Shown: piece after piece, positions 4,236 to 47,817 of the stretch
Position numbering within the stretch: position 1 is the first letter of the stretch
Layout of the letters: the number at the start of each line of letters is the position of its first letter
Source: Styela clava
Lineage: Eukaryota
Direction of reading: 5' to 3'
Length of the DNA: 64,000 nt
Assembly: GCF_964204865.1 (NCBI RefSeq)
Contig: NC_135252.1
Span: 5,456,001-5,520,000 of the forward strand
Translations under genes and position numbers: made by a program
The notes under the pieces: model-generated
Seen by the model: only the letters and a program-made list of their open reading frames with translations
Databases searched by the model: none
What the model was told of the DNA's origin: nothing

Positions 4236-4272
<37 letters not shown>

Positions 4273-20344: not shown

Positions 20345-21400
20345 TTAAAAAAATTTGCTCAACATTATATACTCCACACCCACTTGGGTATCATTATATA
20401 TGTCATATACATTATATCTAAACAATAAAAAAAACTTTATGTCCCAAAACAATGTTAAGGCCCAATTCTGCCGGACTATTTCTAGATTATGGAACAATTG
20501 GCTTATGATAGTAGGCTAAGTTTTTTTCATTGTTGTATATTCCACTTCCGTTGAAATCTATAGTATATATGTAGGAAATCATGAACTAAATATTCTTACA
20601 TATTACAATTTGAATTTTTTTAATGTTGTATATTCCACTAGAATCGTCAATATTATACCTTAAAATAAGATATTTTATTTGAAAAAATTAAATTTGTTTT
20701 ATTAAAAAATAAAAGGCAATAGGAAACGCTCTTCATATAAATGATGCTATGGAATTTATTCCTCATCATATATACATTATTAAAGATTTATTGATCCAAA
20801 TAAAGTTGGCGGAGACCAGTTATTCACAAGGTCATAAGCGTTTCCGTGCCATATAAAATATTAGCATCTTCTGGCTCTGTTAATTAACATTTGAGTGACC
20901 CGAATATTATCTTGATAGCAGGCTTTTCTACAGGGACTGACATATTGGCAGGAAATATAGACAAATATAGTTTTTAAATTACATGCCACGCAGATTAATG
21001 TTGCGTTGATTTTATGACAATATAATCCCCAATGCTACGAATATCAGTACGTTTATACACGATGCTACACGCCATTAGGGAGAACGAAAATTATAGTGGA
21101 GAATAGCATAATCCTTTGTCAATTATGACTGACGTCCATCCGTTATATAGTGTTTAGATTAATCCAAAAATTACCACAAGAGTTTTAAATAAATATTATA
21201 ATAGAATATAATAACTTATTGCCATGTTATAGCGGACGCAATTATCGGTAATGACGATTTGATTTTCTGGGGAAATTATAAATACCATTGTATTAATAAA
21301 AATAATTAGGCAAAATTATCTCAAATTCAGTATAAATATTGATGTCGGGACTAAAGTTACACCAATTTTTTTACCGAAGTTTCTCTTAAGTTATTCTGCC

Positions 21401-24400
21401 ATGAGCGTTTTACGTTCGTGTTTATCGATTTTGTTGCTGGGCTGTGTCGTACAAGGTAAGCTTCTTTTGAATTCGTTTTACTTGATTAATTAATGCGAAA
21501 AGTATATTTAATAAAACGCCAAATAATAAACACATAGTATATATCAAAACCTGATTAAAATTTTATCAAGAACGAGTGTGTTCGTCAAAAAATATGACCA
21601 AGTCTCCAACAAAAGTGCTGATCGTTAGGTATAAATAATATTTGATTACTGATGTGATGTTTTCTGATATTCAAATCCTATTCTAAATTGATTGTGATTA
21701 GAAAGTTTGTCAATGGTATCGAATATAAGATTTTCATTGCCTCGGGTTCCGTTTTAAATTCCGATACCTTGTCTTTTTTTTTTGCATGAGTCAAAAACCA
21801 TACTGTTAATATTTGGCGAGAAAACTTCACGGTCTTGTTTATTCACGATGGGTTCCAGGCTCCGGTAATAGTAATAAAACATTATTATATATTTAAGACT
21901 AATACAGTCCAGTTATAGCTACATATGACACGAGTGCAAAGCAGGTCCGTGTTTAGTATTTGCAGTATATTATCTTATCTTTATAATTAGTTGATTGTTA
22001 TTATCTGAAATGTAATACTACTCTATTTAACTCGTTTAATTAATGTAAAGTTAGGTAAGCTTGAAAGTTAACCTATGCATAGTTGCAAAGGCAATGGTAA
22101 GCGTACAAGGAAAGTCACGTTACTGGTTTTTATTCTAATGTTTTAGGGCGTTTTTTAATTGCAATTTATTTGGAAATAATGTTTGAAACCCAATATTTCA
22201 GTAGCTACTAAAACACGTCACAAATTCGCGTTAGTATTAACAATTTTTTATTTGGCATTCAATGTACAAGGTCATCTAGTTTTAATCACGCGTCGACTTC
22301 TGAAAGTGTGTCTGCAATGTCAGACATCAAAATACAGCGACCTCGCGGAAGATGTTTCAAAATGCCGCATTATAAATTAGCAAACAAGATTCACTTCAAA
22401 GAGGTATTTACTATCATAGGAATAGGCTCCACAAATTAGTTAATTGCCTTTATTAATCGACATTTACGTCAATCGTTAATTAGTCAACATAGCAGAAAAA
22501 TTAACAAATGACGGAGTTAGTAATTTAGGTTAATTGCCCAAATTCATATCTATGTATGTTACAAAAATCTACCCCAAGTTAATTGAATTTAACGACTACT
22601 CAAGAAATTTTTCGTGGTCAAGCATGAAATATATATAGCACGATCTATATATATATCGCGTAATGCAAAATGTTTGTCTTTACTTAAGTACAGTTAAAAC
22701 ATATTGCAACATACTACATCAGATGCCATGACTTCAAAATTATAAATTACGATTAAAATTGAAATTGAATTTTTTGCTGTAGTTGTTGGATTATTTCGTT
22801 TCTCGGTGTGTACATGATTCTTGACCAGCACCGTTGCCGTTAGCGCATAATTGTACCAACAACATTGTTTTATAAATTACAACTCATTTGAAGAAAAACA
22901 CTATAATTTTTATCCGGGTGGTCTGACATATACCAATTGATCTAATGGATTCGCTAAGCTCGTACGACATGACTTATTAAACAGTATTAAAGTTAAAATA
23001 GTATTAATGAATTGAGTATGACAATGTACCATACTCAATTAACTTAATTAAACTTAAGTAACAATTATCTGCACTTAGTAAAATACCAAATAACACAACA
23101 CTAAATATAGCATTTTTCATGATAATAGCGGAAATATGCTTTGCTAACTTATTATTAAGATTCATTTGGTGTCGAACAGGTGGTCAGGTTAATAACGTTT
23201 ATGACGTTTGTACTCCAAATAGCTTTAGTCTCCAAGCGATGTCGAATATTTAAGCTTTAGTTTTGTTCTTTAATATTTATAGTAAACACGTCATATCCGA
23301 ATTCAATTATTCTTCCATTTATGTGTTCATAAATATATTCCCCATATTTGTTCATGAAGATAAATTTTAATTTTTCTTATTTCTTCATATACGACAGCCT
23401 GCGTTCTGATTATAGCTTTCAATAATTGAATATGATTTTTCACAGGCCATTACAAATGTCGCGAAAATGAAATATGGAAATCTTCTTTGTTTGGAGGATC
23501 TTGTCAATGTGTAGAAGGATACAAACCAAACGTTCTTGGAATATGCGAAAGTAATTTTTGTCTTTTTTCTAAGATATAAAAAAATTCAAACTGTTTTTGA
23601 TGGTAAAACTAACAATTCCTTTTTCCTTATTAAAGTACATGCTTTATTTTGAATTTTAGAACCCGATCTTTGTTCCGGTAAAAACTGTCCTAAACATAGT
23701 CACTGTGAAAATGGAGTCTGTGTATGCGATCCTGGTTGTGAAATAAGACACGGAATATGTGAAGGTAAATCTTTATTTTCCCATTGGAATAGACAATTTC
23801 AAAAGTGCGGGTGCGCTTTGCCTTTGCTGAATCCTCGTAGCGATTTGTCCTTTTGATGCAATATCGAATTTATCCGAATAAGAATCTAGTGAAATATTCA
23901 TTCAAAAGGACCTTGTCATCAAAGAAATCAACCATACCTTTTGATGGGTCTTATTTTACTTCGGTTGTGGAAGAAACAGTCACTAGACTGATCGAATATG
24001 CAAGTCTCAATATTTAACGTATCATGAGTTAATTTTATTTATTCAAAATTATTATTTTCCTTTTCAGAAAGTTTATCTAAGCGATTCAATAACGAAGGAA
24101 AAGAATTGATATATGGTATGATTTTGAGAATATATCGTTACCTCCGTTGAGCACAAATTAATTTATAAATAAAACCGCGGGAATTTAAATTAGTTTTCTT
24201 CTCGAATGAAACTACTACTCAGTTTTAAATAGTCTATTACCTCAGTGTAAAACAAATTATATTTATACCACCAAACTTACATCATGAATCAGTTTGTTTG
24301 AAAGTATGTAAACGTAAAGCAGTTTAGTTGCAAGATGTTCGAGTGACAATATACAATGCAGACTGTAACAGGTGAATACACTTCCAGTAGATACCATATT

Positions 24401-27400
24401 AATCTTATGGGGTGAATAATAAGGCTCCATACATTTTCAGATGCCTGTAAGGACGTTACATGTCAACTGAACGAAATTTGCATCAGACTTCCTTACTCCG
24501 ACCAAGGAAAATGTGTCTGCAAACCAGGATATGTTTACAAGATTGGAGTTTGCGTCAGTAAGTCGAAATGCTATTCACAAGATTTGCACGTGATTTTCTG
24601 TTACTTGTAATATAACTATCTTGATTTCTCAAATTATGATGTAATATTATAATATAAAATTTGGATTTTGTTATATTCTGACAATTATATAAACTTGAAA
24701 AAGATTCCATATGTGTTAAGCAGTTGTATATGTTCCGTCGACAGTAATGATTTTCATTCACCTGCCTGTCAAGTTGAGAATGATACTCAATCAAGTTCGA
24801 ATCAATTGTAATTTGAGGCATTATATTTTGATTAGATGAAATGATGAATTGTCAACAAAAAGGATTTCATGTAAATTGGTTTAAAAATCTGATTATAAGC
24901 AGAGTATCGAATATTTGATCCCAAAGTTGAACAAATTTATTAAACCGATCCCATTTTTTATATTTCAACCTTTATGGGGCAATTTCATGTAAATATATTC
25001 AATTGTTTTTGTAAAAAAAAACACAGTTTGCACCTAAAGTAATTATGTGTCGGAAATGTTATTGAACTCGACTAACTGTCTCCATATATTATTTTGATGT
25101 AGGAGCGATTTCAAACCCATGTGCTTACATGTCGTGTCGAGAGAATGAAGAATGTATGACTTTTGATGGAAATGGTTATTGCGTTTGTAAGTTTGGATAC
25201 ATGAAAACCAAAGAAGGTGTATGCGAAAGTGAGTATTAAACGTAGTCATATATTATATTAAATGTAAATTAATTAACCTCTCTGACAAACATACTACTTA
25301 AAAGTGCGTTTGATTAATGGAAATACATATAATCTATACAGACACGATCATCTCAAACATAATCTAAAATAGGATAAAGTTTTTTGAATCAGCTTGAGAA
25401 TTCGCAACCGGAGCATATATTGTCATGGATGTCATTCATGTTCAGAATTAGGTACATCCAATCATATCAGCTTTATTTTAACTAATATTGCTCAAATCTG
25501 CCGATATGAAACCAATTTTATAAGCGGTGGTTTTTCGAAGTGTTGTTAAAATATTACTACTACTTTTTACATCTTCAGGCGCATTTTAAAAACACAATTT
25601 GTCATACTTTAATCATTATAATGGGTTTATCTTTGCGTTTACTGAGATTTTATTTTGCAGAAAAAAGTGTCTGTCATGACCACTCATGTCCAGCGAATGG
25701 ATATTGTGTAGTTGATAATGGAAATCCTGTTTGCAAGTGCCTAGAAGGATATTATATGTCATATAGCTCATGCAAAAGTAAGTTGTCCATAAATTGAGCA
25801 ATTATAATCCCAGCAAACCAGTTCGCAAATTGATTGATGAGATAAGATGAACAAACGAATATATTTTAAAGTTATATTAAATTAAACAGAAATAGTGGCA
25901 GATCCTTGTGCCTCAGTGTCCTGCAATAAACATGAAGAATGTATCGTACATAGCGGAAAAGGTTACTGCGTTTGTAAAGTTGGATACATGAAGAACGGTC
26001 ATGGGGAATGTGCATGTAAGTCTGTATACTACATATTTTGAGTTTAATATTTAAAAAAAGAAATGATAGTTTTGAATTTCAAAACGTGGCAATTTATTTA
26101 GAAATCAAACTAGCGTCTCTATTTAATACTCCTTGCTCTTTCTTTCTTATGCTACATGTTGACCAGCTAGAGATATTTTTTATTGAACTGGGCAGGACGA
26201 TTATCTTCCGAATGCTCAACTCTGATCAACTGTATCAATTAAATTCAATTGTGTTTAGTGAGAAATCCTTGCGACGATAAAGTGTGCTTCGACAACAGTT
26301 ACTGTATTATGGAAGACGACAAGCCGGTTTGCAAATGCACTGATGGATACAAGTTAGATGGCGGATTATGCATCAGTAAGTTTAATATATTTCCTTGTTT
26401 TGTGATTGGCTGACTATTGAGGGAGTAAAGAAAATGCTGCCAAATAAATAGTAAAAAAGATTTTAGATGAATGTCTGGCAATGCGAATATTCAGATCCTG
26501 GTAGTGAACTGTCTTACTGTTCAACTAACTAATTGTTTAACACATTTTCCAATAGAAATCATCGTGTTGAGCCCTTGCGCTGCAATGAAGTGTGGAGTTC
26601 ATGAAGAATGCCTAGTACATGAAAACAAGGGATATTGTGTATGTAATCCTGGATACATGAAAAACATCGATGGAATTTGTGGAAGTGAGTATAAATTAAG
26701 TAAAACATATGGTATCAATCTATGTTTTTCGATTGTGCCACAACCATTCCGCTTCTAATAATACTAATAGTATATATGTATATATATATATTAGAAATGC
26801 CAATGGTATTTTTGTTGTTACATATTGTACTATTTCACCAAATTTTAACGATAATTATATAATTTAAAGAAAAATCTCTTTGCCACGATCACAAATGTCA
26901 TGAACACAGTTACTGTGTAGAGAAAAACAACAAGGCATACTGTGAATGCATGGAAGGATACGTTTATTTGGATGGCGTGTGCAAAAGTAAGAAAATTTAA
27001 TTTTGATAATTTGCCATGCAATTAAATCCGGTATGTTTTACCTTGATTCCATTCAGATGGTATTACAAAATGCTGTTTCATGTACAACTAATACATATTC
27101 GTTTTTCGTAATACTTCAACAGCTAAAGTAATCGTTGTCAACCCGTGCGATTTCATGAAATGTGGTCTCCACGAAGAATGCGTGACTCACGAAGGAGAGG
27201 GATATTGTGTGTGCTTATATGGATACAGAAAAAATTCTAACGGAATTTGCGAAAGTAAGTTACTCGTTTTATCGGTATCTATGGCATGATTATGACATAA
27301 ACGATAGAGGTTATGCAACTTAAAATATTCAGCAATTGCCAAGAGTCACAGTCATGTGAAAGATATGTTGCTCGAATTAGATTTTATTAGATTGCATTCT

Positions 27401-30400
27401 GTTACTTCCAAATTATTCATTCATTCATTTCAATTTCGAGACATCTTAAGAACGCCCTGAAAGTTTTTAGATTCGTTTTGCAATATATATATAACGTCAC
27501 TTTTTTACTTGTTCATTAATTTTGAACAATGGACGTAATGCAATGCAATATACATAATGCATGTACATATAATTTACAGAGAAAACACCTTGTCATGATC
27601 ATATTTGTCAAGAAAACAGCTACTGTATTTTGGAAGGAGATAAAGCAATGTGCAAATGTTTAGACGGTTACGCAAGCTCCGACGATGGTTGCAAAAGTAA
27701 GCGAGACTCTTAATCTTACGGTTCCGTAAAATTATATTTAATCGATGTTATACTTTGATATATAATCACTTTGTAAATCTTTGCAATATGTTATACTTTA
27801 ACAAACAAATTACTCTTCCATTCAGAAATTTTCAGCGATCCTTGCAATTTGAGAGTTTGTGGAAATTATGAAGAATGTGTCAGTCAGGAAGGAAAAGGAT
27901 ATTGTGTGTGTAAACCTGGATACACCAAGAACACGAATGGAATTTGTGAACGTATGCTACTACTGTTATTATCTTTCGCTCATTTTAATGCAAACGATCC
28001 AAATTATTTCATTTCATAAGCTAGAAGATGTTAATAGCAAGAAAATACTAATGCCAAGACGTTGTGGGCCTTGAAATAGATCGGTCAATATACTCGACAC
28101 CAATTTTTACTGTGTGTCAATAAATTTATATTATTTTAACGTTTCAGTTCACAATTAGCTTTTTATTTTACACTTAAAAATCTTTGCAGTGAAACAGTAT
28201 GCCGATCCCACAGTTATTGTCTTTTGCATTTCTTAGCGATATTGCCCTGACTCTTTCCTAAGCAAACTTTCTACTTTTTTCAGTAAATAATCCATGCGAA
28301 AAGAAACAATGCCAACCGAATAGTTACTGCGTTCTACCTCAAGGTGAACCAATTTGCCAATGCATTCAAGGATACTCGCTCTCTCCATCAGGCGATTGCA
28401 AAAGTAAGTCATACTTATATATATAAATCGTTTGCTTCCGTAGTATGTGCACCAAGATGGCGCACAACCTGAACAAGGTATGTGTACCGGGTTACGATTC
28501 AGGTTGTGCGCCATCTTGATGCAAGTTCTACGGGAGCGCCCAGAATACAGTAGAAAATATTTGAAAAATAGGATCACAAGCCAAGTAACCTATGAACAAA
28601 TATTTCAATCGGTTTCAACCCAACTGATATTATATTCTAGATTTACCGTTTTCATTTTCCTAATCCGTGATTTTTTTTCTTTGCGCCAAAGAAATCTCCG
28701 TTGATCCATGTTTCTTGAAAAAGTGTCTACCTAATGAAGTGTGCGTTAATAGTGATGGTCAGGGAGTCTGCACTTGTAAAACTGGTTATAGGAGGAACCA
28801 GTACGGATTCTGCGAAAGTATGAGATTTATTCATTTTAACTAATAAGAATATTTCAACCACAAAATAAATAAATAACTGTTGTGAAAAGTAAAAATGATA
28901 TAGTTTGTGACTTGCATAATCATTATTATTTTCCATTATCAGAAGCTACTATGATAGCTTTAAGATACTCAGTGGCCCCCATTTTTTTTAATCCGTGATT
29001 TTTTTCGTGCCTAAGAAATCTCCACTGATCCATGTACCTTGACAAAATGTCTACCTGATGAAGTGTGCGTTAATAGTGATGGTCAAGGAGTCTGCACTTG
29101 TAAACGTGATTATAAGAGGAACCAGTATGGATTCTGCGAAAGTATGATATCGATTTATCATTCATTTTAGCTAATAACAATATTCTAACTTGAAAATAGT
29201 TATCTATTATCTTCTACCTTTATCAGAGGCTTTTATGATAGCTCTAAGATACTTGGTGGTATTCATGTTCTTTATCGTAACCAGTCTTTATATTTTATTG
29301 TATTTATTCATGCCGCTTAAACAGTGCTCAAACTTTCAACAGAAATTGATCCTTGTGTGTATACGAAATGCTTTGAAAATAGCTACTGCGTTGTCGTTGG
29401 CAAACAGGGTATTTGCCAGTGCAAAGATGGCTACAAGATGTCTGCTGATGGAATTTGCCAAAGTATGTTTTACTCTTCTTTCTTACCACGAAGAAGCAAC
29501 AGTCAGGCTGTTGCGAAACAGTTAATATTAAATATTGCATAAATTTTATGATATCATAATGCGGATGTACGAGACTGAAATGTAAAAACGGAAGTAAAAA
29601 TACTGGTAATTTACGATAATTGAATGTAGGCATGTTGACAAATGGAGAATGAAGCTTTGTATTAAATCGAGCGTAGATATTACGAATACTTGACATCGAC
29701 CACTTAAATTAATATGGTAATTTAAATATGGTATATTACGTCATAATATATGTAAAATTTCATCAAATCCTTGAATTAATGATATTTCATTCGATTCGTA
29801 TTTCATAAAGGCGTGAGCACAGATCCTTGTGAGACCAAAATATGCAATTTTCGAAAGGTTTGTGTTGCATATGAGGGACGAGCCCACTGTATTTGCCAAG
29901 CTGGATATTCAGAAAACACCAATGGAAATTGCGAAGGTATGGTTGGAAAATCAACAGGAAAAATTACATATTGAGTTGCAGAATACAAGCTTTCTTACCA
30001 AATATATTATTTTATGCTTTAGCTGACAAGCATCCATGTCATGGCATCGTATGCCCATCATACAGTCACTGTGAGGTCGAGGGATCTTATGGAGTGTGCA
30101 GATGTGACAATAAATACATGGCTAAAGAGGGTCTATGCATACGTGAGTGTTATTTGAAATATGATCCTCATCAGTTGTTATATCAAATGTGGTCTCAAAT
30201 CATACCGCGGTGTCTTCATATTTCTCTTATCTATACTGAATAATATGAGTATGAGAAACACTTATATGATACAATAATATTAATAAGATAATTTGAAATT
30301 TACAAGAAATGTACTGCAATATGACATTCATAACGTTGACTGAAAATGCTATTTGCAGAGTCAGAGAGTATTTAATTTAACTTTACTCTCCAACTTAATT

Positions 30401-36400: not shown

Positions 36401-39400
36401 CCAAATCCATGTAACGGACATAGCTGTAATAGTTTTAAAGGACTTTACTCGTGTAAATGCAGAAAGGGATATTTTGGAAAACATTGTGATAAAGGTGAGA
36501 CCAAGTTTTTTCATAATTGTAAAACCAAAAACTGGAATTGATTGGAGTCACGCGGAATGGCCCAATACTAATTCGTCTCTAGTGCAACTCTTTCCATATA
36601 TACAATGCAACGTTCCTTCTAGGAATAATTCGAAGTTATTCGACTTCATTTTTCTTAAGTGTTTAGCAAATCTTTTAATTCCTATTTTAGATTGAAAATT
36701 TTCACCTCATTACATTACTTAGGTCAAACCCCATTAAACTCCAAACCCGAGATGGTAGGGTCATTTGTGTAGTGTTTAGTTTGAAACGATCTTAGTTTAG
36801 TTTCAATTGTTGAATAGTAATTATTTGCAAAGTATGACAGCCAATTAAAATTATTGGGTAAATTTACATTTTCTTTCCAAAACCTCTGTTGTTTTTTCCG
36901 TGGGAATAAATTTATTTTCTATAATACATTTATACGATTTGCGGCACGTATTTTCACAAAATGTACTGAATACAAATTTATTAAAATCCAACATATTTAT
37001 ATTCTGTAAACAATTAAAATCACTAGGATTCCCAATACAATCCATCCAATATTCTGGTATGCAGCCAACTAATGTATAGAAGTCTCGATACTCATTTGCA
37101 TTATATTTTATACCGTAACGTTCTATCTGTTGAAAATAAGAGAATAGAAAATTTCTGTTCACCAAATGGTGTAATTCACAGACTCCTTGTTCTTCCCAGT
37201 TTTTTTTTTTTTTTTTATAAAAAATGGCATTCTTGCATATTGGAATTTCTTGTTGTACCATAATGATTCATTATATAGATGGATATTGGCATTACATGTT
37301 AATTCCTTGTATATGTACTAGGTACGAAGTGTATCCCTAAATGTTACAAAATGAAGATTTTTTATGAAGCGCGAGAGTTATACCATAAATTTCCTTTTAG
37401 TATACAATGTATTTCTATATCTCGTAAATAATAAAGTTGAATGGTTTTCCAATTACTCTCTTTCCACTCAACCATACAACCATTTCAGTTTTTCAGAAAT
37501 AATGACACTTTCAACATCTACCATATCAATTCCACCTTTCATTTTCAATCAGTGTTTTACGCTTGACTCTTTCCCAATTTAAATTTCCACAAAAAACGAA
37601 ATATTAAAGAATTCAGTGATTTTACAATTTTTTTGGGTATCGTAACTGGTGAAAATGTAAATTGATAGTAAAAAAAAATAGGATTAATGATTTGATTGCA
37701 AACACTTTTCCCAGAATTGTTAAATATGTTGTATGTATTCATATACTTTACAGAGGATCCACCTAACGGATGTGACCCAAATCCATGCATGAACAGCGTC
37801 AAGTGTATTCCAAAACCCTTCGGAAAGTTTCAATGCCTCTGTAAGAAAGGATATTTTGGAAAACATTGTGATAAAGGTAAGACCAAGTAACTTCATAATT
37901 GTAAAACCATAAACTGGAATTGATTGGAGTCACGCAGAATGAACCAATGCTAATTCGTCTTTGGTGCATCTCTTTACATATATATATACAATGCAACGTT
38001 CAAAGTTATTCGACTTCATTTTTTTCAATTGTGTAGCAAATCTTTTAATTCCTATTTTAGAATGAGCATTTTCACATCATTACATTACTTAGGTCAAACC
38101 CCATTAAACCCCAACTCCGAGATGTTAAGGTCATTTGTGTAGCATTGCAAACAATGGCTATGTTGTAAAATACCTAATTAAATATCTTGACATTGTGTTT
38201 TTGTCTAATATTCTGAATGGTGTTGATAAAACATGGAGTTTTTATATACTGGTGCAAAAATGGAGAATTTAAATTTATAGCTATCACTATACAGCAGGGG
38301 TCGGCAACCTTTTGTCGCTCGCAGGCCAAAATTAGGGATTGCAAGTCATTGGCGGGCCGCACATATTTATAGAAAGTTGAAAACCGAACGGATGATACTT
38401 TTTATAATAAAAATCAAGCAGTGATACATCTCTCGAATAAAATATAGAAATATTTCCTTATTGCATTGCATCTCAAAAAATTTCATTTGAATATTTTCGG
38501 CGCCATTGAACCCTTTGCACTTAGCCTCAACTTTTCTGCGTTTTTTTGTCTAACTATAATCCAATTATAGGTTATAATATTAAACGCGTAATTGTGAATT
38601 ATATATTTGTAGGTTACAGTATAATTTAGTCTACACGTGTCTCACAATAAATTCTGTTACGTATAGAATATAATCATCAAAACAGCTGTTTTGTTACTAT
38701 AATACAGTGAAGCATCACGGGCCGTGGGTTGCCGACCCCTGCTATACAGGTTGTGTCGAGATCTAATGATCCCGATTAAACAAATACTGTGGCCAACAAT
38801 ATAGTTTTTGGAATATTGCAGCATTGATGTTTGACATCTTGGTTTCAATGCATGAATTTGGTTGAATTAGTTTTTCGATTGAGGCCCAAATTTTTTTATT
38901 AATATGCTCAAAACAAATATGTTGTATGTATTTATATATTTTACAGAGGATCCACCTAACGGATGTGACCCAAATCCATGCATGAACAGCGCCGAGTGTA
39001 TTCCAAAACCCTTCGGAATATTTCGATGCATCTGTAAAAAAGGATATTATGGAATGTATTGTGATAAAAGTGAGAAGTTTATTGTTGTTTTCATCCTTAG
39101 TTTGCACGTAATACATTCAATCATTGGTTGCTAATCTGACTCGAGAGATCTACGACTTCTGCCAATAAATTGTATTTTAACTTAGAGATCTTGTGCAGTA
39201 ACAATTATGGAGACGCCAAACAATAGATAAAAGCGAACTGAATAAAATGTAAAAGTTCGTTTATATTAAAAAAATATTATCAATGCAGAAACCTCACCTG
39301 TCAATCCGTGTTATCCAAACCCATGTAAACATGGAGGGAAATGCAATTAGTGAATATACCTTATAGTATGGATTATGAGTATGCGCCTATCAAATATTTC

Positions 39401-42400
39401 TGAATGTCAGCGAAAATCGTCGTTTTTATTCAAAGTCTAAGTTGAAACGGAAAACAAATTCCAAAACTATAATTTTATTCTTCCTACAGAAGACGAAACA
39501 CCCAAAACACCAAAGAATCCTTGCTATCCCAACCCATGTCAAAACGGAAAATGTTTGTCACCACCTGGACAAAAAGGAGGATATAAATGCATTTGCTATA
39601 AAGGTTATAGAGGGGATCACTGCGAATATAGTAAGTTAAATATATCATTTGTGTTCACAGGGTATTACGGCATAAATCGCCTGTATCGGTATATTCTTTA
39701 CATTCTATTTGAGTCCATATAACTTTAAGTAAATTGCTTAATTTGTTTTGTGGTGATTAGTGCATTCCTAAACTCCAGCGAAAAAACGTGTACAACCACA
39801 AGTAGCATTCATTAAAAATACCTGTCTGACTGTCAGCTGAAATTTTAATGCATTTTATTATATTAGTGTAGCATGCAACAAATGCACATTTAAATATGCA
39901 TCTTGTAATTTAGTGAAGGTTCAGATGAAACGTCATGTATGTAAATTGCTGCAAAACCTGTATTTAGCAGTTAGCACTCAATGAGCTGCTGCGTAAATCC
40001 CAATAACATCTATAGTTATTATAGCTATTTACTCGCATTCGGAGTGGAATAATTTAGTGAAGTACAGTAATCTTGATATTGTTGCAAAAGGAAACTGTTA
40101 GTTAGAAACCAAATTCATTTTATTTTAAAACTACCACCAACAGTTATTAATTCAAAAATTGTTAAATTGGCTGATTCTTCTGGAAATTCACTTGCATGTT
40201 TTTGAGTTACATCCACATAACAACTTATTTAACTCTTTTGTTCAGAAAATCCAAAAACACCTAGTAAATGCTACCCGAATCCGTGCCAAAACGGTGGAAA
40301 GTGCTACAAGAAAATGTTTGGATATCAGTGCAGTTGTGCGAAAGGATACTACGGAAAACACTGCGAATATTGTACGTAACTCAAAGGAACTAGATCAACT
40401 TTTACTTGTTCATTTGCATGCCAAATTGTGAAAATGCTGATCCCCAGCTATTATTGAGCGAGGTTGGAGACATTCGAATCCCTACCATTGGTGGCTTATG
40501 TCCTATGTCTACTATGAAGAATTCTTTTTTTTTTAACATATCAACGAAAAACGCGTGTAACTTACAAATCCATATAGAAAATGTATTACCTTTTTTCAGA
40601 CAAACCAAAAACACCTACTCCGAAAAATAAATGCTACCCGAATCCATGCCAACACGGTGGAAAATGCTTTGAAAAAATGTATGGATACGAATGCCGGTGC
40701 GCGAAAGGATACTGGGGCGAAAACTGCCAATACAGTAAGTAGATAAAGTTGTGTGATATTCACCACTTCATTATTTTCTGCAAAAACCTAGTTAATAGTG
40801 TTGATATTAAAAAAAATGTGGCATTACTCTACTCTTGTATATGGCTTGTTTATGCTCAAAATTACCATTTGTTTGCGAGCCAACTTGTTAGTTAAAGACT
40901 AAGTTAAAACGGAAAACAAATCCCAAACATTTATTTTTATTCTTCCTACAGAAGACGAAACACCCAAAACACCAAAGAATCCTTGCTATCCTAACCCATG
41001 TCAAAACGGAAAATGTTTGTCACCACCTGGACAAAAAGGAGGATATAAATGCATTTGCTATAAAGGTTATAAAGGGGATCACTGCGAATACAGTAAGTTA
41101 AATATCCTATTTAGGTTCACAATAACTTACGGCATAATTCGCCGGTATCGGTATAGACTTTACAATCTGTTAGAGTTCATATGACTTTAAGCAAATCACA
41201 GACCTTTGTTTTGAGGCAATTAGTACATATCTTGGTATGGATTATGCGTATGGGCATATCAAAAATTCTTAAATGTCAGCGAAAATCGTGTAATTAGCAT
41301 CCATTAAAAATAACTATCTGACCGCCAGCTGAAATTTGAATGCATTTTATTATATTAGTATGAGGCACGTTTAAAATGCATCATGCAATTTAAAAAGGTT
41401 CAGACTAATGAATCTTCATATATGTAAATTGCTGCAAACACTGTGTTTAGCACTCAATGAGCTGCGTAAATCTCAATAACATCTATAGTTAATAGCTATT
41501 TGGTCTCATTCGGAGTGGAATCGTTTAGTGAGGTACAGTAATCTTGATATTGTTGCAAACGAAAACTGTTAATTAAAAATCGAATCCATTTTAGTAAAAC
41601 TACCGCCAAAAATTATTAATTCAAAAATTGTTAAATTGGCTGTTTCTTCTGGAAATTTACTCGAATTTGTTTGAGTTACCATCCACATAACAACTTATTT
41701 AACTCTTTTGTTCAGAAAATCCAAAAACGCCCAAAACACCAAAAACACCTAATAAATGCTACCCGAATCCGTGTCAAAACGGCGGAAAGTGCTACAAGAA
41801 AATGTTTGGATATCAGTGCAGTTGTGAGAAAGGATACTATGGAAAACACTGCGAATATTGTACGTAACTCAAAGGAACTAGATCAACTTATACTTGTTCA
41901 TTTGCATGTCAAATTGTAAAATTGCTGATCCCAAACTATTAATACGCGAGGGTGAAGACATTCGAATCCCTACCATTGGTGGCTTATGTCTTATGTCTGC
42001 TATAAAAAATTCTTTTTATTTCAACACATCAACGAAAAACGTGTGGATCTTACAAATCCATATAGTAAATGTATTACCTTTTTCCAGACAAACCAAAAAC
42101 ACCTACTCCAAAAGATAAATGCTACCCGAATCCATGCCAACACGGTGGAAAATGCTTTAAAAAAATGTATGGATACGAATGCCGGTGCGTGAAAGGATAC
42201 TGGGGCGAAAACTGCCAATACAGTAAGTAGATAAAGTTGTGTGATATTTAACACTTCATTATTTTCTGCAATAACCTAGTTAATAGTGTTGATATTGAAA
42301 AAATGTGGCATTACTCTACTCTTGTATATGGCTTGTTTATGCTCAAAATTACCATTTGTTTGCGAGCCGATTTGTTAGTTAGGGACTAAGCTAAAACGGG

Positions 42401-45400
42401 AAACAAAACCCAAACATTTATTTTTATTCTTCTTACAGAAGACGAAACACCCAAAACACCAAAGAATCCTTGCTATCCCAACCCATGTCAAAACGGAAAA
42501 TGTTTGTCACCACCTGGACAAAAAGGAGGATATAAATGCATTTGCTATAAAGGTTATAGAGGGGATCACTGCGAATATAGTAAGTTAAATATCGTCACGC
42601 TAATAACCGAACTGCGTAAGTCATTTTTGGCGATTTTGAGTTTTTTTATAAAATAGGTATTTATGTAATGCTGCGCACCTGTCTGTTAACTCAGATTTCA
42701 TTTCAAGAATTCCGAAACCAATAAAAATGGAGATTTAGTATAACATGCACATTTGTGCAATTGTTTCGTCATAATGAATTATCATTGGTGCCGTAGGACT
42801 ATTGTGACGTCACAAAGGAAAAATAACCTCGGCTAAGTATTTTCGAGTTTTTGCATCTCGAATTCTAGCTTAACACGTATTAATTTGAATTTATACTACA
42901 GTATAGGAAGGCGTGCACTTGTGATATTCACTGTCCGAGTCCAATTCACCTTGGTAGGCTTTTATATTGGGTGCATTGCTGTTTTATTCTTTATAATTAA
43001 TCTTAGTCTTATTTCGGTGGGTGCGCAGAACTTGTTATATTATTGAAATATATATTTTTAAACATAAAAAATAATGTAATTGAAACTGATTAGCTATTTT
43101 TGGGATTAGACATTGTAGATACTGAAAATAACATTCGTTTTTGGAATGTTTAGTTTTCAAGACAGGTGCATATAGTAAAGTTGCAAAATTGCGTATGTCC
43201 CCAAGTCATAGACACATTTCTGCCTAAGTCACAGTGCGCCATTATGACGTCACTTAACTGCGTCATACAAATTAACTTAAATCCGGCTACGATTAAAAAA
43301 TTGAACCACGGCAAATTATTGACTCTCAATGACAAAACAATATCATTAGGAAGTTTTTTACGTTTTTCTCAAAACTGCTAAAAATGACTTACGCAATTCG
43401 GTTATTAGCGTGACGAATCATTTGTGTTCACAGGAAATTACGGCATAACTCGCCTGTATCGGTATATTCTTTACATTCTGTTTGAGTCCATGTAACTTTA
43501 AGTAAATTGCCCATTTTTTTGTGTGGTAATTAATGCATACTTAGCATGGATTGTGCGTATGTGGCTATGAAAGATTCCTAAACTTCAGCGAAAAAACGTG
43601 TACAACCACAAGTAGCATTCATTAAAAATAACTATCTGGCCGTCAGCTGAAATTTTAATGCATTTTATTATATTAGTGTAACATGCAACAAATGAACATT
43701 TAAATATGCATCTTGTAATTTAGTGAAGTTTCAGATAAAACGTCATGTATGTAAATTGCTGCAAAACCTGTATTTAACACTCAATGAGCCGCGTAAATCC
43801 CAATAACATCTATATTTTTTAGCTGTTCACTCGCATTCGGAGAGGAATAGTTTAGTGAAGTAAAGTATTCTTGGTATTAAAAAAAACTGTTAATTAGAAA
43901 GCGAATCCATTTTAGTTTAAAACTACCGCCAAAAATTATTAATTCGAAAATTGTTAAATTGGCTGTTTCTTCTGGAAATTCGCTCGCATTTTTTAGAGTT
44001 AGCCTACATCCACATAACTTATTTAACTATTTTGTTCAGAAAATCCAAAAACGCCCAAAACACCAATAACACCTGATAAATGCTACCCGAATCCATGCCA
44101 AAACGGCGGGAAGTGCTACAAGAAAATGTTTGGATATCAGTGCAGTTGTGAGAAAGGATACTACGGAAAACACTGCGAATATTGTACGTAAATCAAAGGA
44201 ACTAGATCAACTTTTACTTGTTCATTTGTATGTCAAATTGTAAAAATGCTGATCCCCAGCTATTATAATAATTCTTCTATAAAAAAAAATTTCTCAACAC
44301 CTCAACGAAAAACGTGTGAAACTACAGATCCATATATATAGTAAATGAATTACCTTTTTCAGACAAACCGAAAACACCTACTCCAAAAGATAAATGCTAC
44401 CCGAATCCATGCCAACACGGTGGAAAATGCTTTAAAAAAATGTATGGATACGAATGCCGTTGCGTGAAAGGATACTGGGGCGAAAACTGCCAATACAGTA
44501 AGTAGATAAAGTTGCGTGATATTTAACACTTCATTATTTTCTGCAATAATCTAGTTAATAGTGTTGATATTAAAAAAATGTGGCATTACTCTACTCTTGT
44601 ATATGGCTTGTTTATGCTCAAAATTACCATCTGTTTGCGAGCCGATTTGTTTTTAACATATCTTTAAAAAAGGACAGTTTCAGTCCTGTATCACACCTTT
44701 AATAAATAATTTTTGTAAAATATATGTCAGATGATACACTAAAAAATGCTGAAAGTAGAGTGTTGCTCTTGAGAAATATCCCGTTAACAACTACTTGCAA
44801 ACAGTAACATTTCCTAGCAAATCTAATTTTTTTTGGTATTTTCGACCATTAGGATGCTGATATCATCTTTCCATTAAATATTCTCATGTTATTCTCAATT
44901 TTAAGTAATAGCAACTTTTATTTATCTTTGTTTCAGAAAAAAATAGTCCGAAAACTCCCCCAAAAAGCAAATGTTATCCAAATCCATGTATGCACGACGG
45001 TGAGTGCTACGTAACTATGTTTGGGTACAAATGCAGTTGCAAAAAAGGATATACTGGGAATAACTGTCAATACAGTAAGTATTTATCAATATACATTCAT
45101 TCTGTCATGACGAGGTTATAACCGTTTTTATTTGATAGAAGTTTGAATATTGATGGGACGGTCTCGGTTCGTTGTTATTAAATTCGCCATAACGTGGTTA
45201 CCAAACGCTTACACAAAATGAAATATTTTAACTTGAGTATCACTCAATAAATGGCAATTATTACGACATTCCGCCCGTTTAACGCTACTTTCAACCAAAT
45301 TTGAAGATTGTGGATGTTTACTATTCGTAGTTTTAGCTTTGTCCATCGAAAAAGTGCCCGGACAGTACTTTTGACGTAGTAGTGAATGAAATTACAGAGA

Positions 45401-47024
45401 ATAAGTTTATTCTACAGCTTTTTTTATAGGTTTTATTGGCGAAAGTGCTTGTTTGTGATTGATTCCAACATTTCTTTAGAATACAATTCATCTCCTAAAC
45501 CCAAAGACCGGTGTGATCCTAACCCATGTGCAAACGGTGGAACGTGCAAGAAATCGTTTTATGGATACAAATGCGATTGTCCCAAGGGATATACTGGAAA
45601 ACATTGTGAATCAAGTAAGTTTCTGATTTGACAAAATTATAAATTATTTTGAATAACGCTTAAAAATAAACATTTTGAGGAAATAATACTTCAAGAATAT
45701 TCACGTATTTTTCCTACTCCTGGTTTACGCCAGACTTCATAAACAAAAAGTTACCATTTGCAATAAAAAATCTGGTATAATTTACTCGACTGGTAAAAAC
45801 AGAGTCGGTGTGACTGAAATACATTTTTAATGCGCCGAAGAATATCTATTAGAACAATTTGATTTATTTTGAGAAAACAAAATTAAATCAAATTAAACAA
45901 CAGAAAATAATGATGCAATTTTGCAGCGAGTTTATATATAAGAGTGTCATGAATTCATTGTGAATTTAATCTCCAGTATAAGGCGTGTTGAGCTTATTTT
46001 TGTTTTCTTTTTAGAATACAACAACCCATCTCCTAAACCAAAAGGACGATGTAATCCTAACCCGTGCAGAAATGGTGGAACGTGTAGATCTTCGTTGTTT
46101 GGATACAATTGCAACTGTCCCTATGGGTATTATGGAAAACGATGCGATTCGAGTAAGCTTATTTTTTAAGTTGTGTCACGAACAAACGATATCAGCCAGG
46201 GGTTAACACGTGTATTACATTATTGTCATTGCTCACTTTACCAATGTACAAGATTTAGATTAGGTAAGATTTTAATAGACAAATGGTCATCCACAAACAT
46301 CACTTGCAAATTATTTGTTTTAGTCTTTAAACAATAAGAAATATTTTAGGCAATACCTATCAGTATTTTTCGTTATAAAAAAAAAACAGATAAGAATATT
46401 TAGCACTAAGAGTGCGTTGTATCTTGCTGGACCAGCGTTAATGCCAAATCTTATCGTAATTGTCACGATAAATTGATAATTATCGCCATTATCACTTATT
46501 ACAAGTTGCGCTGTTGGAATAGTGGTGCGTCTAAGTACGTATGTTTAATCATCTTCCATCAGTTCGTTTGTAAGTACTGATCTTCGACTATAATTAGTGG
46601 AATTCATCTCGGGGCGCTCCGCTTGATATCAAACAATATTGACTAAATGACATCTCCAATACCATTTTTTTTATGAAGTCATTTAATACTCTATTGAAGT
46701 CATATATCTATGTATAAAAAGTGAAAATTAGAGTTGTAAAATCTATTTTTTTTCTCGTTTGACACTGATTGCTCTAATAAACTCTTTACTTTTGTAGAAA
46801 AGGGTGGATCTCCGAAGAGCAAGGGTTCGCCAAAAGGATCACCTAAAAAAAACTCGCCGAAAGGTTATTCACCCAAGAAAAAAACATCAAAAGGTTATTC
46901 ACCCAAGAAAAAAACACCAAAAGGAGATTCACCTAAGAAAAAATGGCCTAAAGGAAATTCACCAAAAAGTAATTCCCCAAAAGGTGGTAACAAAAAAAAG
47001 AAGGGCTCACCAAGAAGAGGTTAA
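21401..47024 (+). CDS. Large secreted EGF-repeat protein (~52 exons, ~45 EGF modules including 6 calcium-binding type, ~2030 aa) with a basic SPKK-repeat C-terminal tail
   Basis: Signal peptide exon 21401-21455 ([19 protein letters not shown]). Phase 1-1 exons start at 23446, 23660, 24068 (linker), 24441, 25103, 25661, 25890, 26259, 26556, 26870, 27123, 27580, 27826, 28284, 28692, 29016, 29343, 29811, 30023, 30595, 30901, 31101, 31564, 31895 (linker), 32103, then 3x[24-nt microexon + 2 cbEGF] from 32421/33555/34746, then 35821, 36375, 37754, 38947, then 3x[3 EGF] from 39490/40952/42439, then 44937, 45480 and 46015. The last exon is 46798-47024. All introns are GT-AG, all exons are open, and the total is 6099 nt. 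The two short linker exons are less certain. Confidence 0.88.
28431..28540. mobile_element. 110-bp hairpin MITE copy (intronic)
   Basis: gcaccaagatggcgcacaacctgaa...ttcaggttgtgcgccatcttgatgc...gggagcgcc. Confidence 0.85.
28661..29260 (+). repeat. Recent ~324-bp tandem duplication of one EGF exon plus flanking intron
   Basis: Exons 28692-28817 and 29016-29141 are nearly identical, and the intron flanks (taatccgtgattttttt; ttatcaga.gct..tatgatagct.taagatact) are shared. Confidence 0.9.
30440..30549. mobile_element. 110-bp hairpin MITE copy with imperfect 8-bp TSD
   Basis: ggacctcctgaagtatg...catacctcaggagcccc, flanked by taattttt / tcattttt. Confidence 0.85.
32400..35790 (+). repeat. Tandem triplication (periods 1134 and 1191 bp) of microexon + two calcium-binding EGF exons
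   Basis: Microexons at 32421, 33555, 34746 (DPDSTPPP); IDECDLE.DNCDR exons at 32734, 33887, 35078; [12 protein letters not shown] exons at 33154, 34331, 35483. The introns also align. Confidence 0.95.
36773..37720 (-). mobile_element. Degraded L1/Tx1-clade LINE ORF2 fragment (post-RT region) in an EGF-gene intron
   Basis: The minus strand, across frameshifts, reads [48 protein letters not shown] and later [30 protein letters not shown], which are typical L1/Tx1 ORF2 motifs. Confidence 0.75.
38295..38741. mobile_element. hAT (Buster/Charlie-type) MITE, 447 bp
   Basis: Perfect 15-bp TIRs caggggtcggcaacc / ggttgccgacccctg and a perfect 8-bp TSD ctatacag (38287-38294, 38742-38749) with central TA. 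Confidence 0.95.
39289..39350 (+). pseudogene. Truncated EGF pseudo-exon inside the EGF gene
   Basis: After the acceptor ...tgcag the frame reads [19 protein letters not shown] (3 of 6 Cys), then runs into sequence homologous to the intron at ~41218-41290. Confidence 0.8.
39430..44650 (+). repeat. Tandem triplication (periods 1462 and 1487 bp) of a three-EGF-exon unit
   Basis: Exon triplets 39490/40246/40600, 40952/41716/42089 and 42439/44040/44363. Introns align, and copy 3 carries an 825-bp insertion. Confidence 0.95.
42592..43416. mobile_element. Non-autonomous DNA transposon, ~825 bp, with ~49-bp TIRs
   Basis: TIR tcgtcacgctaataaccgaa(c/t)tgcgtaagtcattttt at both ends. The element is absent from the paralogous introns at 39631 and 41093. 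The TSD is ambiguous (AT/TA-rich). Confidence 0.9.
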
Positions 47025-47628: not shown

Positions 47629-47817
47629 CTTTGTACAAAGCCCCCGAAAAAAATAAAAAGCACCCCCCCACCGCTCAAAATTTAAAAAATTGGTAATTAA
47701 CCGGTTGAGGTTAGGGTGAGGGAGAACCCTTACTGGATAATTACTAATCTTTTAATTTTGAGCGCTGACGGGGGTGATTCCTCACATTTTCGCATAGGGG
47801 GCGGGGTTTTGTGCAAG
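47629..47817. mobile_element. Fold-back (MITE-like) element, ~190 bp
   Basis: Imperfect inverted arms ttgtacaaagcccc..cacccccc..cgctcaaaattt..ggtaatta / taattacta..aattttgagcg..gggggtg..ggggttttgtgcaa. The spacer contains ggttagggt. Confidence 0.7.

What the first reader, a model, noticed from the sequence alone, without database searches (positions are those of the whole stretch)
21401..47024. Candidate bioadhesive/matrix protein: secreted ~45-EGF rod with zoned chemistry
Seen: signal peptide, no transmembrane segment, no ZP/TB/vWF/CUB domain. There are four zones: ~23 EGF modules (many His-containing), 6 cbEGF, 16 Tyr/Lys-rich EGFs (for example [35 protein letters not shown] and [11 protein letters not shown]) with PKTPK linkers, and a cationic tail. 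Established: mussel foot protein-2 is a secreted tandem-EGF plaque protein rich in Lys and Tyr/DOPA, and neighbouring Lys and DOPA promote wet adhesion. Inference: an independently evolved, much larger adhesive, tunic or wound-sealing scaffold with a metal-binding end and a catechol/cationic end. The architecture does not match Notch, fibrillin, SCUBE or MEGF proteins as I know them.
Basis: partly seen in the sequence, partly recalled or inferred. Interest (0 to 1): 0.8.

Follow-up and report, generated by a model that had tools for sequence, protein, structure and literature searches.

The report
Secreted 45-EGF sea-squirt matrix protein
A sea-squirt (Styela clava) gene of 47 exons encodes a secreted, membrane-free chain of 45 EGF domains whose rear half and tail are unusually rich in lysine and tyrosine, much like mussel glue proteins. 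This makes it a good but unproven candidate for a tunic or adhesive matrix protein.

Summary
On the + strand, 47 exons (21401-47024) all have AG/GT borders and phase-1 introns. They give one open frame of 1,975 codons: a signal-peptide exon, 23 divergent EGF-like modules, 6 calcium-binding EGFs, 16 classical EGFs and a Lys/Ser/Pro tail of 30-nt repeats.

Contigs of RNA-like runs confirm the last four predicted splice junctions exactly. They show a poly(A) end at 47181 and no spliced exon downstream to 50200, so there is no transmembrane exon.

The last 12 EGF cores carry 25% Lys+Tyr, against 10.6% in 33 other EGF modules of the same genome. They are joined by PKTPK-type linkers.

The genome is Styela clava. 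No orthologue or paralogue with these modules was found.

The adhesive/DOPA reading is only partly supported. Composition, secretion and abundant spliced RNA fit a structural matrix or glue protein. Tissue, tyrosine modification and metal binding are untested, and the "His-rich metal-binding end" is weak (His 3.2%).

EGF-repeat glue proteins are already known in mussels, scallops, echinoderms and Ciona (APAP-1). I therefore class this as a new variant of a known kind, of moderate interest.

The scan noted the tail separately (s1-825880) and another Mfp-2-like EGF gene elsewhere in this genome (s1-816034).

The parts
21331..21338 (+). TATAAATA box 63 nt upstream of the start codon. A possible AG trans-splice acceptor lies 10 nt before the ATG.
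   Evidence: Read directly from the sequence. Function is inferred.
21401..21455 (+). Exon 1: [18 protein letters not shown] + 1 nt, a signal peptide. Predicted cleavage is after VQG.
   Evidence: Kyte-Doolittle mean is 2.3-2.9. It is the only such phase-1 first exon between 8.5 and 46.7 kb.
23446..23550 (+). Exon 2: 4-Cys half EGF module ([10 protein letters not shown]...)
23660..32213 (+). Zone 1: exons 3-24, 22 divergent six-Cys EGF-like modules, one per exon. Two subtypes largely alternate: 42-aa 'DPC..EEC..GYCVC..GY.KN..G.CE' and 39-aa 'C(HDH).C..NSYC....CKC..GY'. Exon starts: 23660, 24441, 25106, 25661, 25890, 26259, 26556, 26870, 27129, 27580, 27826, 28284, 28692, 29016, 29343, 29811, 30023, 30595, 30901, 31101, 31564, 32103.
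   Evidence: Exon table; alignment A2. Pfam matches are mostly below the cut-offs (Pvs28, MSP1, EB, EGF). The AF2 model has pLDDT 89.7 and an EGF fold. These modules are almost unique to this locus in the genome.
32734..35611 (+). Zone 2: exons 25-30, six calcium-binding EGFs arranged as three copies of a two-exon cassette. The zone is acidic (pI 4.05, net -30).
   Evidence: PF07645 above the cut-off. Asx-hydroxylation pattern in all six. Exon identity is 92-99% and intron identity 71-89%.
35821..39069 (+). Zone 3a: exons 31-34, four classical EGFs (CDPNPC...) with Pro-rich DPPNG/NPPTDP linkers. Lys 12%.
39490..44497 (+). Zone 3b core: exons 35-43, three copies of a three-exon cassette (A: [29 protein letters not shown]; B: ...[15 protein letters not shown]; C: ...[15 protein letters not shown]) with PKTPK-type linkers.
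   Evidence: Exon identity is 96-100% within types A and C and 83-96% within type B; intron identity is 36-94%. The B>C and C>A junction letters appear as loose ends in RNA-like contigs.
44937..46152 (+). Zone 3b end: exons 44-46, single-copy Lys/Tyr-rich EGFs. Exons 45 and 46 carry the only O-fucose-type C2-x4-T-C3 sites.
   Evidence: All borders are confirmed by GT..AG joints in contigs of runs X1, X5 and X8. Motifs.
46798..47024 (+). Exon 47, coding part: a 74-residue tail with 34% Lys and S-P-K-K-like decapeptide repeats (K-G-x-S-P-K-K-K-x-P). Stop codon TAA at 47022-47024.
   Evidence: TRF finds a 30-nt period with 4.2-4.9 copies. The joint 46152>46798 appears in four runs. One 30-nt unit is missing in run X8.
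47025..47181 (+). 3' UTR and poly(A) site.
   Evidence: A contig of X1 ends at 47181 followed by 19 A, against 7 A in the genome. There is no canonical AATAAA.

Best explanation
This is one real Styela clava gene. Its product is a secreted, non-membrane protein of about 1,975 residues and works as an extracellular structural (matrix or cohesive) protein.

Shown:
- The exon chain and the secretory leader.
- The absence of any anchor.
- The 3' splicing and the poly(A) site.
- The block charge pattern.

Inferred mechanism:
- 45 disulfide-locked EGF modules form a long, protease-resistant rod.
- The six acidic cbEGFs bind Ca2+ and stiffen the middle.
- The C-terminal third (12 EGFs with 25% Lys+Tyr, Pro/Lys/Thr linkers carrying exposed Tyr-Lys pairs, and a polycationic decapeptide tail; net charge about +94) sticks to polyanionic or glycan partners. 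Candidates are sulfated tunic glycans, cellulose or GlcNAc polymers, and surfaces. It may also pair with the acidic block of neighbouring molecules, as a block polyampholyte would.
- The many surface and linker tyrosines are candidate sites for oxidative cross-linking by peroxidase or phenoloxidase.

This would make it a functional analogue of mussel plaque protein Mfp-2 in tunic, holdfast or larval/juvenile glue.

The gene grew by tandem duplication of 2- and 3-exon cassettes.
For: - Gene model: 47 AG/GT exons, all phase 1, one open frame. There is a unique signal exon with a TATA box.
- RNA: four predicted junctions are confirmed to the base. There is a poly(A) end at 47181 and nothing spliced downstream. 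Exon k-mer depth in X1 is 1,500-26,000 against 8-45 on introns and 10-85 in X5.
- Domains: PF00008 and PF07645 score above their cut-offs. The zone-1 module has an EGF fold.
- Composition: zone pI values and net charges. Lys+Tyr in the EGF cores is 25% against 10.6 +/- 4.4% in 33 other EGF modules of the same genome, p=3e-7. Linkers read [13 protein letters not shown] and similar. No hydrophobic segment lies beyond exon 1.
- Selection: exons are better conserved than introns between cassette copies, so the duplicated coding sequence is kept.
- Uniqueness: the modules are unique to this locus.
- Literature: tandem EGF proteins are recurrent cohesive components of marine glues, and mefp-2 makes up 25-40% of the plaque and binds GlcNAc polymers without oxidation (PMC11697411). 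Ciona papilla protein APAP-1 has multiple EGF-like domains (PMC12817120).
- Enzymes: tyrosinase genes exist in the genome.
Against: - Tissue and stage of expression are unknown because run and sample names are coded. Depth from contigs is a poor measure of expression.
- No data exist on DOPA, dityrosine, glycosylation or binding partners.
- The characterised ascidian holdfast adhesive consists of 1.5-2 kDa halogenated-DOPA peptides (PMC13079984).
- DOPA-forming enzymes were not localised to ascidian papillae (PMC4275875).
- Similarity to mussel EGF glue proteins is no greater than to Notch EGFs.
- No orthologue was found that could lend a function.
Confidence: 0.5

Rival explanations
1. One reading: a mussel-type catechol glue. 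Tyrosines next to lysines are converted to DOPA/TOPA and the His-bearing N-terminal end binds metals. The protein is then the interfacial adhesive or wound sealant.
For: - Tyr is 11.8% and Lys 16.7% in exons 35-46, with YK/KY/YYK pairs in flexible Pro-rich linkers.
- The tail of K/P/S/Y/T decapeptide repeats resembles mussel Mfp-1 in composition (the resemblance is from my own knowledge).
- Tyrosinase genes are present, one of them an intronless ORF 0.9 Mb away on the same chromosome.
- Ascidians make DOPA/TOPA and halogenated-DOPA peptides (PMC13079984, PMC4275875).
Against: - No modification data exist.
- His is only 3.2% in zone 1.
- Known ascidian DOPA carriers are small peptides, not EGF proteins (PMC13079984).
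- DOPA enzymes have not been localised to ascidian adhesive organs, and phenol tanning was considered unlikely there (PMC4275875).
- EGF-repeat glue proteins can adhere without oxidation (PMC11697411).
Confidence: 0.17
2. An egg-coat, follicle or test-cell product, that is a gamete-recognition or envelope protein like the EGF-repeat vitelline-coat proteins of ascidians. Tyrosines would then serve peroxidase hardening of the envelope.
For: - Long arrays of divergent EGF modules that expand by recent cassette duplication.
- Length polymorphism in the tail.
- Zone-1 modules resemble uromodulin, RIPR and Pvs25-type surface EGFs.
- Ascidian VC70/VC120 are EGF-repeat proteins (my own knowledge).
Against: There is no ZP domain and no membrane anchor, and the 3' end is defined by RNA. 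The strongly cationic Lys/Pro tail is not a feature of those proteins as far as I know. No sequence relation was found.
Confidence: 0.1
3. A feeding-mucus or endostyle secretion. The EGF rod would be part of the pharyngeal mucus net, with its tyrosines as iodination or peroxidase substrates.
For: It is a secreted, Tyr-rich, abundant, repetitive protein. The Styela endostyle secretes large repetitive proteins that get iodinated (PMC12992692).
Against: The identified Styela thyroglobulin-like precursor is a Tg1-domain protein, not an EGF protein (PMC12992692). No EGF-rod protein is named among endostyle markers (PMC9953650). There are no tissue data for this gene.
Confidence: 0.07
4. A signalling molecule: a Notch/Delta-type ligand, a growth-factor precursor or a receptor ectodomain.
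For: The zone-3 EGFs score best against Notch1 and Delta-like EGFs in the PDB.
Against: - No transmembrane, DSL, LNR or ankyrin exon. The transcript ends at 47181.
- Only two O-fucose-type sites and no O-glucose site in 45 EGFs.
- Extreme Lys/Tyr bias, and apparently very abundant RNA in one study's runs, which is unusual for a ligand.
Confidence: 0.04
5. A model artefact: the locus holds two genes (zones 1-2 and zone 3), or some cassette copies are assembly duplicates.
For: Cassette copies are 96-100% identical in exons.
Against: - No stop-bearing terminal exon and no second signal-peptide or first exon lie between the zones.
- All 46 introns keep phase 1.
- Introns between copies have diverged (36-94%), and paralogue-specific variants appear in RNA contigs.
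Confidence: 0.1

Closest known systems
[quoted passage not shown]
   Same: Secreted tandem EGF domains of the CxPNPCxNGGxC...GY.G..C class. Basic and rich in Lys and Tyr. Abundant cohesive matrix of a glue (PMC11697411). Pvfp-5 (7qab) matches at about 35 bits per EGF.
   Different: - About four times longer (45 EGFs, against 11 in Mfp-2 by my recollection).
- Has three chemically distinct zones, a cbEGF block, Pro/Lys/Thr linkers and a decapeptide polycationic tail.
- Found in a chordate, not a bivalve.
- Similarity is no higher than to Notch EGFs, so analogy rather than orthology.
- DOPA not shown.
[quoted passage not shown]
   Same: An ascidian secreted protein with multiple EGF-like domains, assigned a cohesive role in larval glue (PMC12817120).
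   Different: APAP-1 is listed at 47 kDa, against about 215 kDa here. Its sequence was not on hand, so orthology and Lys/Tyr content could not be compared.
Fibropellins and Notch-type multi-EGF proteins (top hits P0001-P0150)
   Same: Long arrays of one-exon, phase-1 EGF modules. These are the best sequence matches in 1.84 billion representatives.
   Different: They are acidic cbEGF arrays. In 33 Styela modules K+Y is 10.6% and D+E 11-16%. No top hit exceeds 20% K+Y in its cores or has PKTP linkers. Many have TM or other domains.
Fibrillin/LTBP
   Same: A secreted rod with tandem cbEGFs that carry the Asx-hydroxylation consensus.
   Different: Only six cbEGFs and no TB/8-Cys domain.
Heparin-binding basic tails of secreted proteins and SPKK motifs of histones H1/H2B
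   Same: A C-terminal run of S-P-K-K-like units, 34% Lys.
   Different: Here it sits on a signal-peptide-bearing extracellular protein and is organised as 30-nt (decapeptide) tandem repeats with Tyr/Trp. Its likely partners are extracellular polyanions, not DNA.

Membership tests
Pfam EGF (PF00008) / EGF_CA (PF07645) domain families | Score above the curated gathering cut-off; six-Cys pattern | tested here: met
   Tested exons of zone 3 (32, 35, 39, 40, 46) score 25.7-33.1 bits against a cut-off of 21.5. Exons 25 and 26 score 30.6 and 41.2 bits against 27. All 16 zone-3 modules have the six-Cys pattern.
Pfam EGF families, zone-1 modules | Score above the gathering cut-off | tested here: inconclusive
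   Most modules match several EGF-type models (Pvs28, MSP1, EB, EGF, EGF_3) at E 1e-7 to 1e-2, mostly below the cut-offs. The AF2 model has pLDDT 89.7 and superposes on RIPR, NELL and EMR2 EGFs with TM up to 0.75 but weak E-values.
Mussel Mfp-2-type plaque protein | Secreted tandem EGF repeats, basic, Lys/Tyr-rich | tested here: met
   (exons 35-46: K 16.7%, Y 11.8%, pI 9.2).
Mussel Mfp-2-type plaque protein | Specific sequence relationship beyond the general EGF class | tested here: not met
   Pvfp-5 scores 69 bits for 2 EGFs, and Notch1 scores 101 bits for 3 and 146 bits for 5 EGFs, so the per-domain score is about the same. Mfp-2 itself was not on hand.
Mussel Mfp-2-type plaque protein | Tyr converted to DOPA; located in an adhesive plaque or secretory gland | not testable with these tools
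   No proteomic data are available and sample names are coded.
Notch / DSL ligands | Transmembrane segment plus LNR/ANK or DSL domains | tested here: not met
   No hydrophobic segment beyond exon 1. The transcript ends at the poly(A) site 47181 with no downstream spliced exon.
Fibrillin / LTBP | TB (8-Cys) domains interspersed with long cbEGF arrays | tested here: not met
   All 45 Cys-rich exons are 6-Cys (one is 4-Cys) EGF modules. Only 6 are cbEGF.
ZP-domain EGF proteins (uromodulin, ascidian VC120/VC70) | C-terminal ZP module and membrane anchor or cleavage site | tested here: not met
   The last exons are EGF, EGF, EGF and the Lys-rich tail, confirmed by RNA joints.
Ciona APAP-1-type papilla glue protein | Orthology and expression in papilla collocytes | not testable with these tools
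   Only the review description is available (PMC12817120). There is no sequence and no tissue data.

The most novel reading that the evidence does not exclude
A chordate has independently assembled, in one 215-kDa polypeptide, the three ingredients of mussel glue: Mfp-2-like Lys/Tyr EGF modules, Pro/Lys/Thr/Tyr flexible linkers, and a decapeptide polycationic tail. To these it adds an acidic Ca-binding block. The protein would self-coacervate as a block polyampholyte and be cured through DOPA or dityrosine, making it the main cohesive glue of the Styela tunic or holdfast.
Probability: 0.15. Interest if true: 0.75.

Novelty: new variant of a known kind. Interest (0 to 1): 0.5.

Why it matters
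Styela clava is a major invasive fouling ascidian, and the proteins that build and anchor its leathery tunic are almost unknown. This gene offers a concrete, abundant, secreted candidate whose chemistry is testable.

If it proves to be a tunic or holdfast matrix protein, it would be a clear case of convergence between chordate and bivalve wet adhesives. It would also extend the idea that tandem EGF domains are a general cohesive module that binds glycan polymers.

The three-exon Lys/Tyr cassette would then be a compact natural design (about 140 residues) for recombinant biomaterials.

If it turns out to be an egg-coat or mucus protein instead, the zoned charge design still needs an explanation.

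Tried and rejected
- Profile search of 1.84 billion representatives with the 12 Lys/Tyr EGF exons. It gave 27,812 hits, but the top 150 are generic Notch, fibropellin or uncharacterised multi-EGF proteins. I screened all 150 locally and none has Lys/Tyr-rich cores or PKTP linkers. The gene's own product and any orthologue were absent, although other Styela RefSeq proteins are in the collection.
- The search for homologous proteins with the tail exon and with exon 39 found nothing. The tool only sees proteins of 0.55-1.75 times the exon's length, so this says little.
- ESM Atlas look-up: the service was closed.
- Attempt to learn tissue or stage: run, sample and organism names are coded, and the Styela papers read name no such gene.
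- Thyroglobulin-like or endostyle idea: the published precursor is a Tg1 protein.
The genome was then identified as Styela clava.
- The reading frame of the tail listed by the ORF finder (MDLRRARV...) is the wrong frame. The spliced phase gives the SPKK-like frame.
- An alternative donor inside exon 23 would delete the sixth Cys, so I rejected it.
- Joined step left out. Exons were searched apart. Composition totals were computed in scripts without printing a joined sequence.

Full report
WHAT IS THERE

The window is AT-rich (GC 0.30-0.40) and eukaryotic. A three-frame scan of the + strand finds a regular series of stop-free segments between 23.4 and 46.2 kb, each holding one six-cysteine EGF pattern.

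Each pattern is preceded by an AG acceptor that leaves two bases before the frame, and followed by a GT donor that leaves one base after it. Every module is therefore a symmetrical phase-1 exon.

Chaining the best sites gives 47 exons, all AG/GT, with a CDS of 5,928 nt (1,975 codons). The CDS runs without a stop to TAA at 47022-47024.

Exon 1 (21401-21455) reads [18 protein letters not shown] plus one base, with donor GTAAGC. It is the only Met + hydrophobic exon with a phase-1 donor anywhere between 8.5 and 46.7 kb. A TATAAATA box lies 63 nt upstream of its ATG.

The upstream gene is a lipoxygenase that ends at 8445 with the canonical ...PNSIAI terminus. The downstream gene is a fibrillar collagen that starts after about 51.2 kb.

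RNA EVIDENCE

One run search and one laying of contigs were allowed. I laid four runs from four studies on 44300-50200.

Contigs of X1, X5, X6 and X8 show these GT..AG joints:
- 44497>44937
- 45074>45480
- 45614>46015
- 46152>46798

These are exactly the borders predicted from sequence alone, which validates the method used for the other exons.

Loose ends before 44363 spell the end of a B-type exon (...[10 protein letters not shown]). Loose ends behind 44497 spell the start of an A-type exon ([10 protein letters not shown]). The cassette order B>C>A is therefore spliced as modelled.

A contig of X1 ends at 47181 and continues with 19 A, while the genome has seven. This marks a poly(A) site. 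Between 47255 and 50200 only three short, unspliced contigs of X1 lie, at depth below 4, and nothing from the other runs. No downstream transmembrane exon exists.

In X1 the exon k-mer depth is 1,500-26,000, against 8-45 on introns and 10-85 on the same exons in X5. The spliced RNA is thus very abundant in that study's samples. The tool warns that contig depth is a poor measure of expression, and I could not compare with other genes.

Run X8 carries a different organism label. It lacks exactly 30 nt at 46927, which is one tail repeat unit.

RNA support covers exons 42/43-47 only. Joining exons 1-41 to them is inferred from the unbroken phase and frame, the lack of any internal terminal or first exon, and the single signal exon.

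ANATOMY AND COMPOSITION

Zone 1, exons 2-24:
- 23 divergent EGF-like modules; exon 2 is a 4-Cys half module.
- Two subtypes largely alternate.
- pI 7.2 and His 3.2%. CHDHxC occurs in three modules.
- Pfam matches are to several EGF-type models, mostly below their cut-offs.
- An AlphaFold model built on the 21-module alignment has pLDDT 89.7. It superposes on the EGF domains of RIPR, NELL, EMR2 and uromodulin (E-values are weak, as expected for 41 residues).

Zone 2, exons 25-30:
- Six calcium-binding EGFs, with PF07645 above its cut-off and the Asx-hydroxylation pattern in all six.
- pI 4.05 and net charge -30.
- Three copies of a two-exon cassette.

Zone 3a, exons 31-34:
- Four classical EGFs with Pro-rich linkers.

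Zone 3b, exons 35-46:
- Twelve classical EGFs (PF00008 above its cut-off).
- K 16.7%, Y 11.8%, P 12.3%, pI 9.2, net charge +68.
- Nine of them are three copies of a three-exon cassette.
- The EGF cores alone, without linkers, hold 25% Lys+Tyr. In 33 EGF modules taken from three other EGF-array loci of the same genome the figure is 10.6 +/- 4.4% with a maximum of 19.4% (Mann-Whitney p=3e-7).
- Each module ends in C-(E/Q)-Y. It is joined to the next by K or Y plus a linker such as [23 protein letters not shown] or [10 protein letters not shown]. One or two tyrosines flanked by lysines therefore sit in a flexible, proline-rich segment between every pair of domains.

Tail, exon 47:
- 74 residues, 34% Lys, with Ser, Pro and Gly at 16-18% each, pI 11, net charge +26.
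- Built of 4-5 tandem 30-nt units. The consensus is K-G-x-S-P-K-K-K-x-P.

Other features:
- No hydrophobic stretch occurs outside exon 1.
- Only exons 45 and 46 carry an O-fucose-type site, and no module carries an O-glucose-type site.

HOW THE GENE GREW

Exons of the same cassette type are 96-100% identical (A and C types, cbEGF II) or 83-96% identical (B type, cbEGF I). The introns that follow them are 28-94% identical.

The cassettes are thus real, diverged tandem duplicates in which the coding parts are kept alike by selection or conversion. They are not assembly copies. Paralogue-specific variants also appear in the RNA contigs.

WHOSE GENOME

Earlier notes of the scan called this genome Styela clava. 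I tested this.

One of the representative hits, P0140, is XP_077968899.1, "uncharacterized protein LOC120344327 [Styela clava]". It is encoded on a contig of 24,897,793 nt. That is exactly the length of G000:C5. P0140 maps exon by exon to G000:C5:18.82-18.84 Mb at 85-98% apparent identity.

The assembly size of 377 Mb fits the 340-407 Mb reported for this species (PMC7540406).

RELATIVES

Within the genome, the PK-linker EGFs and the zone-1 modules occur only at this locus. Other EGF arrays match at 58% identity or less and only over the core.

A profile of the 12 zone-3b exons against 1.84 billion representatives gave 27,812 hits. The top 150 are Notch, fibropellin or uncharacterised multi-EGF proteins from cnidarians, amphioxus, annelids, a choanoflagellate and others. 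None of the 150 has EGF cores above 20% Lys+Tyr, and none has a PKTP motif.

The gene's own product would have scored far above the list's floor, yet it did not appear. Either it is not in that library or it is only there in pieces.

Searches with single exons in the word-indexed collection found nothing. The length window of that tool makes this uninformative.

Against solved structures, the zone-3b profile hits Notch1 EGFs (about 29-34 bits per EGF) and the mussel adhesive Pvfp-5 (69 bits for two EGFs) equally well. The likeness to mussel glue EGFs is therefore that of the common hEGF/Notch class plus a convergent composition. It is not a special relationship.

WHAT IT MOST LIKELY DOES

Shown:
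- The product is secreted and unanchored.
- It is very long and disulfide-rich.
- It has a neutral block, an acidic Ca-binding block, a strongly cationic Tyr-rich block and a polycationic tail.
- Its spliced RNA is abundant in at least one study.

Inferred:
- It is an extracellular structural protein. Its cationic third and tail bind polyanionic or glycan partners: sulfated tunic glycans, cellulose or GlcNAc polymers, and foreign surfaces.
- They may also bind the acidic block of neighbouring molecules.
- The exposed Tyr-Lys pairs are candidate sites of oxidative curing.

This matches the role given to tandem-EGF proteins in many marine glues. Mefp-2 makes up 25-40% of the mussel plaque and binds GlcNAc polymers strongly without oxidation (PMC11697411). 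EGF-like proteins are main components of scallop byssus (PMC9168380). The Ciona larval papilla protein APAP-1 has multiple EGF-like domains and a cohesive role (PMC12817120).

- It is untested.
- The genome has tyrosinase genes, but none is adjacent.
- The one characterised ascidian holdfast glue is made of small halogenated-DOPA peptides (PMC13079984).
- DOPA-forming enzymes were not localised to ascidian papillae (PMC4275875).
- The "metal-binding end" has little support.

Rivals are an egg-coat or follicle protein (no ZP domain), an endostyle or mucus protein, a signalling ligand (no anchor, few glycosylation-type sites, extreme composition), and a mis-joined model. Odds are given in the fields above.

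VERDICT

The protein is a new architectural variant within a known kind, the secreted tandem-EGF matrix or glue proteins, in a fouling chordate. I rate its interest as moderate (0.5). It would rise sharply if tissue data and Tyr chemistry place it in the tunic or holdfast.

Two procedural points:
- No step had to be referred.

Noticed in passing
window 817-8445 (+): Lipoxygenase gene upstream. Its last exon ends at 8445 with the canonical ...[13 protein letters not shown] terminus. About 13 kb without an obvious + strand coding exon separates it from exon 1 of the EGF gene.
   Followed up: partly
window 51199-64000 (+): A fibrillar collagen gene starts about 4 kb after the EGF gene's poly(A) site. 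A VWC-type Cys-rich exon lies at 53250-53516 and Gly-X-Y exons run from about 59.6 kb.
   Followed up: no
window 28434-28537; also 17721-17981, 20236-20323, 30451-30531, 61184-61271: A short (about 85-100 nt), partly palindromic interspersed repeat, 74-87% identical between copies. Two copies sit in introns of the EGF gene. It looks MITE- or SINE-like. It produces the recurring 'PRWRTT/DGAQPE' pseudo-ORFs.
   Followed up: partly
window 36851-37802 (-): Minus-strand ORF fragments in intron 32 (136 aa and 81 aa). They look like remnants of a retroelement (a LINE-type '...FLW...' motif). This explains why the intron is long (1.26 kb).
   Followed up: no
window 46927 (30 nt): A run with a different organism label (X8) lacks exactly one 30-nt tail repeat and carries two A>G changes. 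This is copy-number variation of the decapeptide tail between populations or close species.
   Followed up: partly
G000:C3:6426341-6427099 (+): An apparently intronless tyrosinase ORF (690-aa open frame, 144 bits to PF00264) on the same chromosome, about 0.9 Mb downstream of the window.
   Followed up: no
G000:C18:12109000-12176000 (+): A giant array of at least 60 EGF exons spread over about 67 kb on another chromosome (many hits). Probably one very large fibropellin- or Notch-like gene.
   Followed up: no
window 31564-31707 (exon 23): This module ends with an odd hydrophobic extension (...[10 protein letters not shown]) before the Lys-rich start of exon 24 (PKKKKC). The donor could not be checked with RNA.
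   Followed up: partly
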